Origin: Paragordius varius
Taxonomy: Eukaryota > Animalia > Nematomorpha
Assembly: GCA_964247055.1 (NCBI GenBank)
Contig: OZ176054.1
Span: 6,665,001 to 6,698,000 of the forward strand
Direction: 5' to 3'
DNA: 33,000 nucleotides
Positions 22,922-30,328 of this stretch are shown in pieces. The notes under the pieces were generated by a model that was not told the DNA's origin, ran no database searches, and worked only from the letters and a program-made list of their open reading frames with translations. The position numbers and the translations under genes are program-made. Positions within the stretch are counted from its first letter, which is position 1, and every line of letters begins with the position of its first letter.

Positions 22922-25521
22922 TTATTGTATACTTGTTGATGCGGTTTCAGTCGTTTCAGCCACTTGCGAAGATGTTGATGATGTTTCCGCCGTTAATGCT
23001 TGCAATGATGTCTCCGTGGCTTCTCCCACTTCAGCAGCCATTCCGACAGCCGCCCCTACCCCAGTAGACGCGGCAACTTCCACACCTGGAGTCAAGATGG
23101 TGAGTCCCACTAAATGTTTTGATTTATCGTCAACATAAAAACTTTATATTTAGTATAACTTTCTTTTACATTTATAACACTGGACAACAAATTTTTCTGC
23201 CACTCGAGTTTTTTGCATTATCTGATATTTAGTATCATTTTAACAGTAAATCTAGAATAATTACAACTTCACGTAAGAATTTTGTATAATTTATTTCTTT
23301 TGATTATGCGCCCTCTTTATCAAAATTTTACTAAAAAATGTTTTTTTTGAAAATATACAAGTAATGCCCATTATCATTCGAAAGAGTAATAAAAACTCTA
23401 TAAAATGCATACTAATATGATTACATCGACAGTTAATATTGGACACAAAGAGCGACAAACGCGCGAAGCGAGAGCATTTTTTTAATTATTATAATTTTAA
23501 AACTAATGGATGAAAATAGCTCAAACTTTGTTTAGATGGTGATGAATGTCCAAAAAAGATAACACAAGAAAGTTATTTTGATTAAAACATTTTTTTATTG
23601 CTTTTATGTCACTCAAAACAGCCATTTTTAAGTTTTTTGTTTTTTAAAAATTACCATCTCATCAATATTAATTTATTTTCTTTAGGAGGCTGATAATTTC
23701 GAAATTTTAAAGATAAAAACAAAGTTTAAGGTATTTTTGATCTTTTATAGCCATTATGTAATAAATTTACAGTTATAACTATGTATTTTAGTATCCACTA
23801 GGTAAAATATTTATGTAATAATTTTTATTAAAAAAGCAAACCAAAAGCTTTTTCAAACATTTTTTTAAATTAAATACTAATATAACTCTAATAATTATAT
23901 TAAAATAATTTATATGATTTTCGAATTTGTTTGTCTGTGAATAATCTTGACTTATTTAAGGATTGAAAATTTAGACGATTTAAATCCAAATAACTTTTAC
24001 ATCCGATTGATTTAAATGACTTACTACCATTTAAAAGATGCAGTTTTTTGCGCTCTTACGAATGATATAAAATACATGGCTTCATATCTAAAACTTTTAA
24101 TTTTCGAAATTTCGAGTTTAATGTTAAATCGGGGCCAAAAATTATCGATTAATTCTAATATAAAAAAATTCTTGCATGCTAGGCCAATTTTCTTTTCAGA
24201 TATACTAATTATGTATTTTAATGAAATTAATTTTAAGTTTACAAGAATGGCAGTTAAAAAAAGTTAAAATTTGTTGTCGGGTGTAATGTTAATAAGCATT
24301 TAAGAAAAACTATATATTCATATATATCACTCTGGGCAAAAAAAAATTTAACAAAAATTTTTTTTTCATCAGATTTATAAACAGCGTATTCATTTGCCGT
24401 AATAATTTTTATTTGTTTACGATCTAGTTTTTAAAATATTGAGAGAAAATCGAAATCGGACAAAAAGTGAGAATCAAGGATATTTAAGGATAATTCAAAA
24501 AATAATGATAAAAGTTGTATTATGGTTAATTATCATTTTAGGAGATATTTCTATAAAATAGCCTAAAATCGAATAAATAGGGTTTCGATAAAATCTCAAA
24601 AGATGGTCTTTTTCTTTTAACACACTTAAGAGTCAAATTTTTTTTATGAAACTATATTAAAATAGTCTTTTTTAATTATTTACTTGCTAAACTCACTAAT
24701 AAAATCTTACATTCATAATTTCAGTAAAAAAAACTTATATATCCAAATAAAACCAAAACATATTGTTTTTTATATTTTAATTTTTTTTTCATTTGGTTTA
24801 TGAGTGTATAATTTTATACTGTTTTATTTTGTAATCTTACCTGAGTGGGAGTTACAAAGTATATAATTTATGGAAACTAATATTTAAACTTGGTGGAAAA
24901 TCAACCAAATATCCGTATAAACACAAAGTAATATTTTTGCTGAGATATGTACCGATATTTGGTTGATTTTAAATACTTTTAAATCCTAGTTTGCATAAAT
25001 TACATACTTTATATCCTCCTATTTTACAAGATTCCAAAATAAAACAGTATAAATTTTTTTATATATTCATAAACCAGATGAAAAAAAAATTAAAAAATAA
25101 AAAACAATATAATTTTATTTAGATATATAAGTTTTTTTTCCTTAAAAATATATGAATGTTAAGATTTTAATAGTGAGTTTTGCTAGTAAATAATTAAAAA
25201 AATATTTTAATATAGTTTCATAATTTTTTTTGACTTTTAAGTGTGTTAAAAGAAAAACGCCATCCTTTGATCTGAGATTTATCGAAACCCTATTTATTAG
25301 GTTTTAGGCTATTTATATATGGATATCTCCTAAAATGATATTCAACCATAATATTTCAGATTTTATTAATATTTTTTGAATTATCCTTATTTTTTCTTAA
25401 TTTTCACTTTTTGCCCGTTTTCGATTTTTTCTTAATATCGCTAAAACTAGGTCGTCAACAAATCAAAATTTTTGCGGCAAATGAATTCACTGGTCATAAA
25501 ATTAACCCTCTTTGCACACAG

Positions 25522-25552
<31 letters not shown>

Positions 25553-28500: not shown

Positions 28501-30328
28501 TTTCGCGGGCCACCCATAATGCGGAAGGCCGCACGCAGGATCTTGTATTAAAGGGTGCCACTATTTAGAGTTCATTTTCTACCTTTATAAACCAATTTTC
28601 AAGGAAATAATGAATTGGGTTAATTTGAGTTAAACACCATATTACAGAAACAAATGCAAAAAACCAAAAATACCAAGCATCTGTAAAAACTTTACAATTG
28701 TAAAATGGTTTGACCGTGAATCAATTAAAAATTATTGAAAATTTATCATTAATAGCATAACAAATTTAGAAAATCTTAAAGTTTTTTTTAGATATCGGCA
28801 AATAGTGATATCGGCTGTTTGTAGAATTTTTGCCATTTTTCTTATTTGGTGTTTAACTCCTATTTATGATAAAAAGTCTATCTTATTTTTATGTGAAATT
28901 TTACAAATGGTATCAACTGAACCCCAAATTTTGATAAATTATATGTGTATTCCAAATATACCGTATCCATAGATACTAAAAATATTTTATTAATCTTCAC
29001 ACCAATAAAATTACCATTATAGATGGCACATATATCGTCAGTGAAATTATAGGTATATTTCCCTCTATCGCCTATAAATTACTTGAAAGTGGTTAAACCA
29101 TTTGCGGATTGCCATTTTACCACTATTCAATTATGATTAAATCAACTTTTTCTCATTTTGTCTGTTGTAAATATACAAAGTTTAGGAAACAAAATACCTG
29201 CTTGATGTTCCAAAACAGATTTTGCTGTAAAATATTAGCATAAATTTCGATTTTTAAGCTATGTAAAATGTTTATAATATATCCTAAGAATGATACAAAA
29301 GTGATTGTTAATGTAATTATTAGACAGTTTGGGGTGTCTTGTGAAATTTGAAATCAAGGTTCAAAAATATATAAGAGAAGGGAAGATCCAAGTGGACTTG
29401 AAGAAATAACCGAAAATGAGATGATATTGAACTGAAGAAAAAATAAAAAACCGTTTAATTTAATAGAATAAATCCTTAAGATATGAACTTAAATATTTAT
29501 AAAAGGGTGCAAGAAAAGATGAATTGGAACAGATTTTATTTTCCTTTACAATCAATTTTAACCAAAAATAGGGAAATGTTTAAATCTTAGCCTTAATCCA
29601 AGATTAGAAGCTGGCGTACATAGGAAATTTTTGCAAATTCCACCTCATAGTTAAATAATCGGTTTGCAAAATAGAAGTTTATTAACTTTTTCCTATAAAT
29701 TTTTTTTAATATTTAATTTAAAAGTGAAACATTATATATTAAAAGGTCAAGGCTCATGATATATTTTAAAATCCTCATCAACTTTGTCGCCACAAATTTT
29801 TCTTTGGACTTTTAAAAACTCTCTAATACAGGTTTTGACATCCAATTTTGAGTTCTAAAAATTTACACTACTGTAATATTTTATCCACTAAGAAAACAAT
29901 GTTTTATCAATTAAACTTTAACCTAAACATTCAAAATATTAGTTAATTTACAAACTATGGGAAATAAAACTACCCCAAAATGTAATTGTTTACTAAAAAT
30001 ATAAACGTTATGAAGTATAACTTAATAGGCATATGGTAACACAAAAGACAAAACTTACGTTTTTACTACCCTCAACTTTTAACATCATAATTATGTTGAA
30101 AATAATAGATTTGGTTGGATGGAATCAATTTTATAATGTTTTAATTTCTTAATTTAATTTATTAATTCATAAATCTTAATGCATACCAAAACTTGCTGTA
30201 TTAAATTTCAAGGTGTCTCCATCAGTAATTTCTGATATATATAGAATAATAATTAATTTACCATATTTTATGGAATAGACATGATTCATTTTGAGTATTA
30301 GAAAAGCTAGTAGAGTATAAAAAAACAT
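22922..30328 (-). CDS. Gene X: micro-exon gene encoding a putative secreted or membrane-inserting ~317-aa protein of unknown family (~22 exons)
   Basis: Exons 5' to 3': 30328-30262 (MFFYTLLAFLILKMNHVYSIKY, signal-peptide-like), 30231-30187, 30075-30059, 29543-29489, 29431-29411, 29224-29198, 29161-29147, 29122-29099, 29071-29015, 28975-28905, 28236-28224, 28200-28156, 28124-28077, 28044-28006, 27975-27907, 27744-27706, 27680-27651, 27625-27593, 27106-27095, 27058-27038, 27010-26993, 23109-22922. All are GT-AG with one open frame. 16 of 20 internal exons are phase 1-1, and the other four form compensating pairs (17+55, 71+13). An alternative end uses a 28-nt intron to exon 22904-22873. Confidence 0.72.
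23190..24300 (-). repeat. ~1-kb dispersed repeat, copy 2 (in last intron of gene X)
   Basis: Reverse complement of 13820-14820; see copy 1. Confidence 0.8.
24328..25523. mobile_element. Foldback (whole-length palindromic) TA-flanked element, Tc1/mariner-like ends
   Basis: Ends CACTCTGGGCAAA / TTTGCACACAGT within TA runs. The two ~580-bp arms are complementary throughout (AATAAATAGGGTTTCGATAAA / TTTATCGAAACCCTATTTATT; AAATCAACCAAATATC / GATATTTGGTTGATTT) around a short loop near 24925. Confidence 0.85.
25573..26139 (-). mobile_element. piggyBac-like non-autonomous element, copy 3 (reverse orientation)
   Basis: TTAA at 25569-72 and 26140-43. The internal sequence is the reverse complement of copies 1 and 2, with more diverged ends. 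Confidence 0.8.
26246..26818 (+). mobile_element. piggyBac-like non-autonomous element, copy 2
   Basis: TTAG (degenerate TTAA) at 26242-45 and TTAA at 26819-22. Same terminal structure and internal sequence as 11359-11911. Confidence 0.85.
28278..28546 (+). mobile_element. hAT-like MITE in a gene X intron
   Basis: Left end CAGGGTGTCCAAC, subterminal GCGGGCCGCA / GCGGGCC / GGCCGCACG motifs typical of hAT non-autonomous elements. The right TIR is decayed. Confidence 0.55.

What the first reader, a model, noticed from the sequence alone, without database searches (positions are those of the whole stretch)
22922..30328. Second tandem micro-exon gene (gene X) with signal peptide directly upstream of gene Y
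Seen in sequence: ~22 exons join into MFFYTLLAFLILKMNHVYSIKY-EITDGDTLKFNTASF-VEGSKN-ENKICSNSSFLAPFYKYL-IQYHLIF-AKSVLEHQA-DKMRK-MVKWQSAN-GDRGKYTYNFTDDICAIYN-...-AYEKTQFMLRQIVLI-KGYERVVLKCSKQTFP-IKLNDSGSIPKFL-ALDILNSQKMVKVSNKTDFCYIL-DVTRNMRNQFNKL-DYIKFIISKK-AYKTNCVITEN-LMTG-GIVGAAA-TFVIIY-LGLTILTPGVEVAAS...ETASTSIQ*. Blocks 28200-27907 and 27744-27593 are unbroken runs of phase-1 exons separated by 25-32-nt introns. X and Y share architecture and size but no visible sequence similarity. Inference: this is a locus of lineage-specific micro-exon secreted proteins rather than a one-off gene.
Basis: partly seen in the sequence, partly recalled or inferred. Interest (0 to 1): 0.85.

Follow-up and report, generated by a model that had tools for sequence, protein, structure and literature searches.

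The report
Micro-exon surface-protein gene with tiny introns
In what is probably a small parasitic animal, a gene with no known relatives appears to be cut into 23 mostly tiny, individually removable pieces separated by some of the shortest introns known in animals; it would make a cell-surface or secreted protein, a design already seen in blood flukes and aphids, but no RNA was available to prove it.

Summary
Gene X holds up at DNA level: 23 exons on the minus strand (30328-22922), all GT-AG, 19 of 22 introns in phase 1, 12 introns of 23-36 nt, one open 302-aa frame. A blind search for phase-1 symmetric exon chains found them only in X and Y (p about 0.002 per class), and SNPs concentrate in the tiny introns (p 0.011). 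The neighbouring GH27 gene lacks this architecture. No RNA run covers X, so no junction is shown. X may also not be separate from Y: its last exon has a phase-1 donor whose first 12 bases match a Y donor, and the fused frame is open. No homologue was found exon by exon. It works like schistosome MEGs, aphid bicycle genes and the myxozoan Tb-MEG1 but fails or cannot be tested for membership. The organism is unidentified; a myxozoan is the best guess.

The parts
30262..30328 (-). Exon 1, ATG plus signal-peptide-like segment, 67 nt, phase 0-1
   Evidence: hydropathy of residues 1-12 about 2.4-2.5; one synonymous SNP at 30310
30187..30231 (-). Exon 2, 45 nt, phase 1-1, after a 30-nt stop-free in-frame intron
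30059..30075 (-). Exon 3, 17 nt, phase 1-0 (less certain)
   Evidence: strong GTAAGT donor, weak coding score
29489..29543 (-). Exon 4, 55 nt, phase 0-1, Cys48
29411..29431 (-). Exon 5, 21 nt, phase 1-1
29198..29224 (-). Exon 6, 27 nt, phase 1-1
   Evidence: blind chain
29147..29161 (-). Exon 7, 15 nt, phase 1-1
29099..29122 (-). Exon 8, 24 nt, phase 1-1
29015..29071 (-). Exon 9, 57 nt, phase 1-1, Cys105
   Evidence: recovered blind
28962..28975 (-). Exon 10, 14 nt, phase 1-0 (added here; uncertain)
28905..28916 (-). Exon 11, 12 nt, phase 0-0 (added here; uncertain)
28224..28236 (-). Exon 12, 13 nt, phase 0-1 (added here; uncertain; exons 10-12 together are symmetric)
28156..28200 (-). Exon 13, 45 nt, phase 1-1
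28077..28124 (-). Exon 14, 48 nt, phase 1-1, Cys147
   Evidence: 5 SNPs in the following 32-nt intron, none listed in the exon
28006..28044 (-). Exon 15, 39 nt, phase 1-1
27907..27975 (-). Exon 16, 69 nt, phase 1-1, Cys186; N172I allele
27706..27744 (-). Exon 17, 39 nt, phase 1-1
27651..27680 (-). Exon 18, 30 nt, phase 1-1; Y204F allele
27593..27625 (-). Exon 19, 33 nt, phase 1-1, Cys218
27095..27106 (-). Exon 20, 12 nt, phase 1-1, lead-in to the hydrophobic segment
27038..27058 (-). Exon 21, 21 nt, phase 1-1, part of the predicted membrane helix
26993..27010 (-). Exon 22, 18 nt, phase 1-1, part of the predicted membrane helix (11% GC; uncertain)
23110..26992 (-). Intron 22, 3883 nt, largely three palindromic or repeated elements (25569-26822, 24374-25500, 23298-24295)
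22922..23109 (-). Exon 23, 188 nt, 52% GC: end of the helix, acidic Ala/Thr/Ser/Glu tail, TAA with overlapping AATAAA at 22926
   Evidence: (coding score 24.8)
22921..22933 (-). Alternative phase-1 donor after 22933; its first 12 intron bases equal those of the Y donor at 21577; would join X to Y in frame

Best explanation
X is a real, lineage-specific micro-exon gene that works like a schistosome MEG. Exon 1 supplies a signal peptide; about 18 small exons, nearly all phase 1-1, build a roughly 205-residue basic ectodomain with 5 cysteines and 5 N-glycosylation sequons; exons 20-23 build one membrane helix; exon 23 ends in an acidic disordered tail. Because the exons share one phase, 16 of 21 internal exons can be skipped singly without breaking the frame, and dropping exons 20-22 gives an unanchored form. 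The most likely role is a variable surface or secreted protein at the host interface of a small parasitic animal. Shown here: exon geometry, open frame, non-random chains, SNP pattern, hydropathy. Inferred: transcription, actual splicing, alternative splicing, topology, parasitic host, host-interface role.
For: Model and phases; modelled frame scores +16 against -20 and -17 in the other frames under a codon model trained on other genes (partly circular, as the frame was chosen stop-free); blind chain test p 0.002; SNPs 6 in 69 intron nt versus 2 in 156 exon nt, Fisher p 0.011, none at GT/AG, 0 of 12 listed indels in exons, p 0.07; GH27 control has exons of 95-274 nt, introns of 73-2374 nt and mixed phases; skip tests; donor consensus reduced to GTa as reported for myxozoans and Dicyema, the only animals known with introns under 30 nt (PMC13644364); a surface micro-exon antigen, Tb-MEG1, is reported in a myxozoan (PMC7923790).
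Against: No RNA: all holders laid were DNA and the one possible RNA run laid nothing. Only 28% of the coding sequence lies in exons of 36 nt or less, against up to 75% in schistosome MEGs (PMC4015677). Six of 15 short introns are in frame and stop-free, so some exon pairs could be single exons. Only 40 of 121 SNPs were listed, and the overall exon depletion is not significant (p 0.075). The organism is not identified.
Confidence: 0.45

Rival explanations
1. X and Y are one long micro-exon gene of about 50 exons. Exon 23 uses the phase-1 donor after 22933 and splices to Y's acidic exons, giving signal peptide, ectodomain, membrane helix, a long acidic disordered linker and a second folded region; the TAA/AATAAA end would be an alternative short isoform or unused.
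For: The 10-mer that starts this donor occurs only twice on both strands of the window, at 22932 and at the Y donor 21577; exon 23 and Y exon 21646-21578 share a short DNA likeness (score 29, null 18.7 +/- 2.9, null maximum 35). The fused frame is open and compositionally continuous.
Against: AATAAA overlaps X's stop; Y has its own possible signal-peptide exon at 22798-22711, phase 0-1; any two phase-1 genes in tandem fuse in frame automatically; shared ancestry of the two segments would explain the likeness without fusion.
Confidence: 0.25
2. X is a real but constitutively spliced orphan membrane protein. The tiny phase-1 exons come from repeated intron gain or exon duplication plus lineage-wide intron shortening, and do not generate variants, as for aphid bicycle genes where diversity comes from paralogues and fast evolution.
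For: Introns under 30 nt are ordinary genome-wide in myxobolids and cluster in multi-intron genes (PMC13644364). The ectodomain has spaced cysteines and a mixed composition that suggests a fold intolerant of skipping (inference). Skipping exon 20 alone creates a stop, and exons 3, 4, 10, 12 are asymmetric.
Against: 19 of 22 introns in one phase (p 7e-8 at a 0.3 rate; inflated by how the model was built) needs an explanation; the GH27 neighbour shows no such fragmentation.
Confidence: 0.22
3. The model is largely an over-reading of AT-rich DNA: a few larger exons (1+2, 9-11, 20-22, 23) or unrelated fragments strung together by freely chosen GT/AG pairs.
For: Chains of 4-6 exons occur in shuffles; block scores mostly not significant; 10 of 15 short introns are multiples of three (p 0.009); no transcript and no homologue.
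Against: Chains with GC contrast are confined to one strand, one phase and two loci; SNPs avoid exons in the densest block; most short introns contain stops or shift the frame.
Confidence: 0.08

Closest known systems
Schistosoma micro-exon genes (MEGs; PMC10526429, PMC4015677, PMC8293314)
   Same: Signal peptide, 10-20+ small symmetric internal exons, larger flanking exons, no homologues, clustering, transposon-rich surroundings; a few MEGs have membrane anchors.
   Different: MEG introns are long (0.1-5 kb); here 12 introns are 23-36 nt. Exons are larger (median 27 nt; 28% of CDS in exons up to 36 nt). The product is larger (302 aa). Splice variation is shown for MEGs, not here.
Tb-MEG1 of the myxozoan Tetracapsuloides bryosalmonae (PMC7923790, PMC8481699; primary abstract not held)
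   Same: Micro-exon gene in an AT-rich parasite genome (28% GC in PMC7835236; window about 26%), protein in and on the parasite surface.
   Different: From memory only: many more exons and a disordered product, which would fit the fused X+Y reading better than X alone.
Aphid/scale-insect bicycle genes (PMC9168663)
   Same: Signal peptide, about 17 micro-exons that nearly all start at codon position 2 (intron phase 1), long last exon. The published structure-only classifier gives 0.99 without exons 10-12 and 0.16 with them.
   Different: No CYC motifs; a predicted membrane helix; introns under 36 nt; no sign of a large family in this window. The resemblance is most likely convergent.
Ultra-short spliceosomal introns of myxobolids and Dicyema (PMC13644364)
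   Same: Lengths of 23-36 nt, donor reduced to GTa, weak acceptor.
   Different: There they are genome-wide; in this window they occur in X and Y but in none of six GH27 introns.

Membership tests
Schistosoma MEG | Internal exons short and symmetric | tested here: met
   17 of 21 symmetric, all 12-69 nt, 13 up to 36 nt
Schistosoma MEG | Micro-exons (up to 36 nt) make up most (up to 75%) of the CDS | tested here: not met
   28% (52% at 51 nt, 72% at 81 nt)
Schistosoma MEG | Long introns, 0.1-5 kb | tested here: not met
   15 of 22 introns are 57 nt or shorter
Schistosoma MEG | N-terminal signal peptide | tested here: inconclusive
   Hydrophobic residues 1-12 by hydropathy; no signal-peptide predictor available
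Schistosoma MEG | Variants made by exon skipping | not testable with these tools
   No RNA run covers the locus; skipping is frame-compatible for 16 of 21 exons
Schistosoma MEG | Restricted to schistosomes; homology to a MEG family | tested here: inconclusive
   No hits exon by exon, but queries are too short to exclude; 26% GC and 23-nt introns argue against a schistosome (own knowledge)
bicycle genes | Many micro-exons starting at codon position 2, long last exon (structure classifier above 0.72) | tested here: inconclusive
   0.16 for the 23-exon model, 0.99 without uncertain exons 10-12
bicycle genes | Paired CYC motifs | tested here: not met
   Five single cysteines at 48, 105, 147, 186, 218; the paper notes some members lack the motif
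bicycle genes | Aphid, phylloxerid or coccid host; salivary expression | not testable with these tools
   Organism names are coded
Tb-MEG1 | Sequence identity or homology to Tb-MEG1 | not testable with these tools
   Sequence and primary text not held
Tb-MEG1 | Source organism is T. bryosalmonae or another myxozoan | tested here: inconclusive
   GC, intron length and donor consensus fit; GH27 relatives found are only 36-60% identical and unnamed

The most novel reading that the evidence does not exclude
X, alone or fused with Y, is an independently evolved splice-variation cassette in a non-schistosome parasite, in which micro-exons sit between 23-36-nt introns confined to these genes and the membrane anchor itself is built from skippable micro-exons. 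One locus would then switch between surface and secreted forms and shuffle epitopes at the lower size limit of animal splicing.
Probability: 0.2. Interest if true: 0.8.

Novelty: new variant of a known kind. Interest (0 to 1): 0.55.

Why it matters
Phase-1 micro-exon genes for host-facing proteins have been described in schistosomes, aphids and, in one conference abstract, a myxozoan. A further case with a defined exon map would strengthen the view that this design evolves repeatedly in parasites, and gives a sequence-free way to find such genes. The pairing of 12-69-nt exons with 23-36-nt introns makes a direct test of whether alternative splicing can work at the smallest animal intron sizes. 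If the source is a fish parasite, surface micro-exon proteins are known vaccine candidates.

Tried and rejected
RNA evidence: one run search and one read-laying run (26900-30500); four runs laid, three are DNA, the possible RNA run gave no contig, and no joint matched a predicted intron. Exon 23 and the X-Y junction lay outside that stretch. Homology, exon by exon: exon 23 against 1.84 billion representatives gave two low-complexity hits only; exons 1-2 read-through in metagenomes, nothing; Pfam on five X exons or exon-spanning ORFs, nothing; exon 9-11 read-through in the Atlas (uninformative, recognition below threshold) and PDB (nothing). X versus Y protein similarity: none. A second X paralogue in the window: none by tblastn. 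A housekeeping identity: no evidence. An apparent Y start near 22140 was rejected: it reads into a stop (absent from the list).

Full report
Setting. The window is about 26% GC and rich in palindromic repeats. It holds an animal-type GH27 alpha-galactosidase/NAGA gene on the plus strand (Pfam PF16499), whose seven exons join into one open frame. Introns of 23-36 nt with a donor consensus reduced to GTa are, among animals, reported only for myxobolid myxozoans and Dicyema (PMC13644364). A myxozoan is therefore my best guess, by inference only.

Observation. Filling the gap with three small exons gives 23 exons, 909 nt and 302 aa without an internal stop. Internal exons are 12-69 nt (median 27), 17 of 21 are multiples of three, and 19 of 22 introns are phase 1. 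Twelve introns are 23-36 nt, fifteen are 57 nt or less. Exons 1-22 are 30% GC and the short introns 21%. The GH27 control has exons of 95-274 nt and introns of 73-2374 nt in mixed phases, so the architecture is not general to this window, though six introns are a small sample.

Is it chance? In AT-rich DNA single chains of four to six such exons do occur in shuffles, and a parser trained on little data scored most blocks within the null, although it recovered many of the same boundaries blind. The stronger test was to enumerate all symmetric exon chains in six strand/phase classes and keep those with exons at least 9 points more GC-rich than introns. Minus strand phase 1 gave 6 chains and 22 exons, three in X and three in Y; the other classes gave 1-2 chains; 450 shuffled scans gave a mean of 1.06 and a maximum of 4 (p 0.002 per class, about 0.013 over six). 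The 9-point cut-off was chosen. Independent support comes from polymorphism in DNA runs: in 27907-28131 six SNPs fall in 69 intron bases and two, in one codon, in 156 exon bases (Fisher p 0.011); no listed SNP hits a GT or AG; none of 12 listed indels is in an exon (p 0.07). Only 40 of 121 SNPs were shown, and over the whole stretch the depletion is not significant (p 0.075). Of three exonic codon changes two are replacements (N172I, Y204F).

RNA. No listed holder is on record as RNA; the three holders laid behave as DNA, and the one possible RNA run of the same species label laid nothing. This is no proof of silence, but no junction is shown.

Protein. Residues 1-12 are strongly hydrophobic, as in a signal peptide. 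Residues of about 20-225 are basic, with five cysteines and five N-glycosylation sequons. Residues 228-246 average 2.2 on the Kyte-Doolittle scale, and the last 54 residues are acidic and rich in Ala, Thr, Ser and Glu. That is type I membrane topology, not a plain secreted protein. The helix is encoded across exons 20-23; removing exons 20-22 keeps the frame and lowers the best 19-residue hydropathy to 1.26. Sixteen of 21 internal exons can be removed singly without a stop or frameshift. Six short introns are in frame and stop-free: either some exon pairs are single exons, or retention is a second route to variants. Exon-by-exon searches found no homologue; with exons this short that is weak evidence.

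One gene or two. Y, provisionally about 26 phase-1 exons from 21734 to 16147, shares no protein similarity with X. But exon 23 has a phase-1 donor just before its stop. The 10-mer starting that donor occurs only there and at the donor of Y's acidic exon 21646-21578, the two exons show a short DNA likeness, and the fused frame is open. Against fusion, AATAAA overlaps X's stop and Y has a possible signal-peptide exon of its own at 22798-22711, only 124 nt after X's stop. DNA cannot settle this.

Mechanism. Most likely (0.45): a stand-alone MEG-like gene whose same-phase exons allow modular skipping, yielding variable surface and possibly secreted forms at a host interface. Rivals: one long X+Y gene (0.25); a constitutively spliced orphan whose fragmentation is a by-product (0.22); an over-read model (0.08). 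I put the probability that the exon chain is a real gene at about 0.9 and that it generates splice variants at about 0.4.

Comparison. X works like schistosome MEGs (symmetric micro-exons, signal peptide) but fails two defining features: micro-exons up to 36 nt are 28% of the CDS, and the introns are tiny rather than long. It matches the gene structure of aphid bicycle genes, scoring 0.16 or 0.99 in their classifier depending on three uncertain exons, but has no CYC motifs.

Verdict. The feature is real at DNA level and is a new variant of a known design. What is distinctive is micro-exons joined by near-minimal introns and a membrane anchor split over skippable exons. Without RNA, the splice-variation claim and the gene boundary remain open. 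Interest 0.55.

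Noticed in passing
window 69-5362, +: Seven exons of a GH27 alpha-galactosidase/NAGA gene (5' end outside the window), introns 73-2374 nt; used as control. Intron positions look like those of human GLA (from memory, not tested).
   Followed up: partly
window 21734-16147, -: Gene Y, provisional 26 phase-1 exons: acidic Pro/Ser/Thr-rich first half with short basic clusters, then a region that looks folded; introns of 23-40 nt; probable stop near 16076.
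   Followed up: partly
window 22798-22711, -: Possible first exon of Y with a signal-peptide-like end, 124 nt after X's stop; TATA-like run just upstream.
   Followed up: partly
window 8339-11299, +: Another orphan gene with large exons (about 8339-8662, 9906-10399, about 11070-11296), hydrophobic N-terminus, phase-1 donors; no homologue; weak Atlas lead to PKD/Ig-like beta-sandwich domains.
   Followed up: partly
window 25569-26822, 24374-25500, 23298-24295: Three MITE-like elements fill X intron 22: two are about 1.2-kb palindromes; half of the first recurs at 11352-11917 and the third recurs inverted at 13826-14764.
   Followed up: partly
window 28450-28500 and 29925-30045: High-copy elements inside X introns 11 and 3: depth 10-25 times background in DNA runs, many loose ends at 28451-28502.
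   Followed up: no
window 6310-6870, +: Array of about 98-100-nt units, several carrying CAGGTAAA (acceptor and donor back to back); no ORF.
   Followed up: no
window 10441-10529 and 10681-10769: Inverted pair of 21-nt tandem arrays inside an intron of the orphan gene.
   Followed up: no
window 5846-6036 and 20738-20922: Dispersed repeat of about 190 nt, 87-91% identical in blocks.
   Followed up: no
window about 15700-15830, +: GC-richer stretch whose translation recalls a decayed retroelement reverse transcriptase (from memory; the Pfam query was rejected for stops, and not repeated).
   Followed up: no
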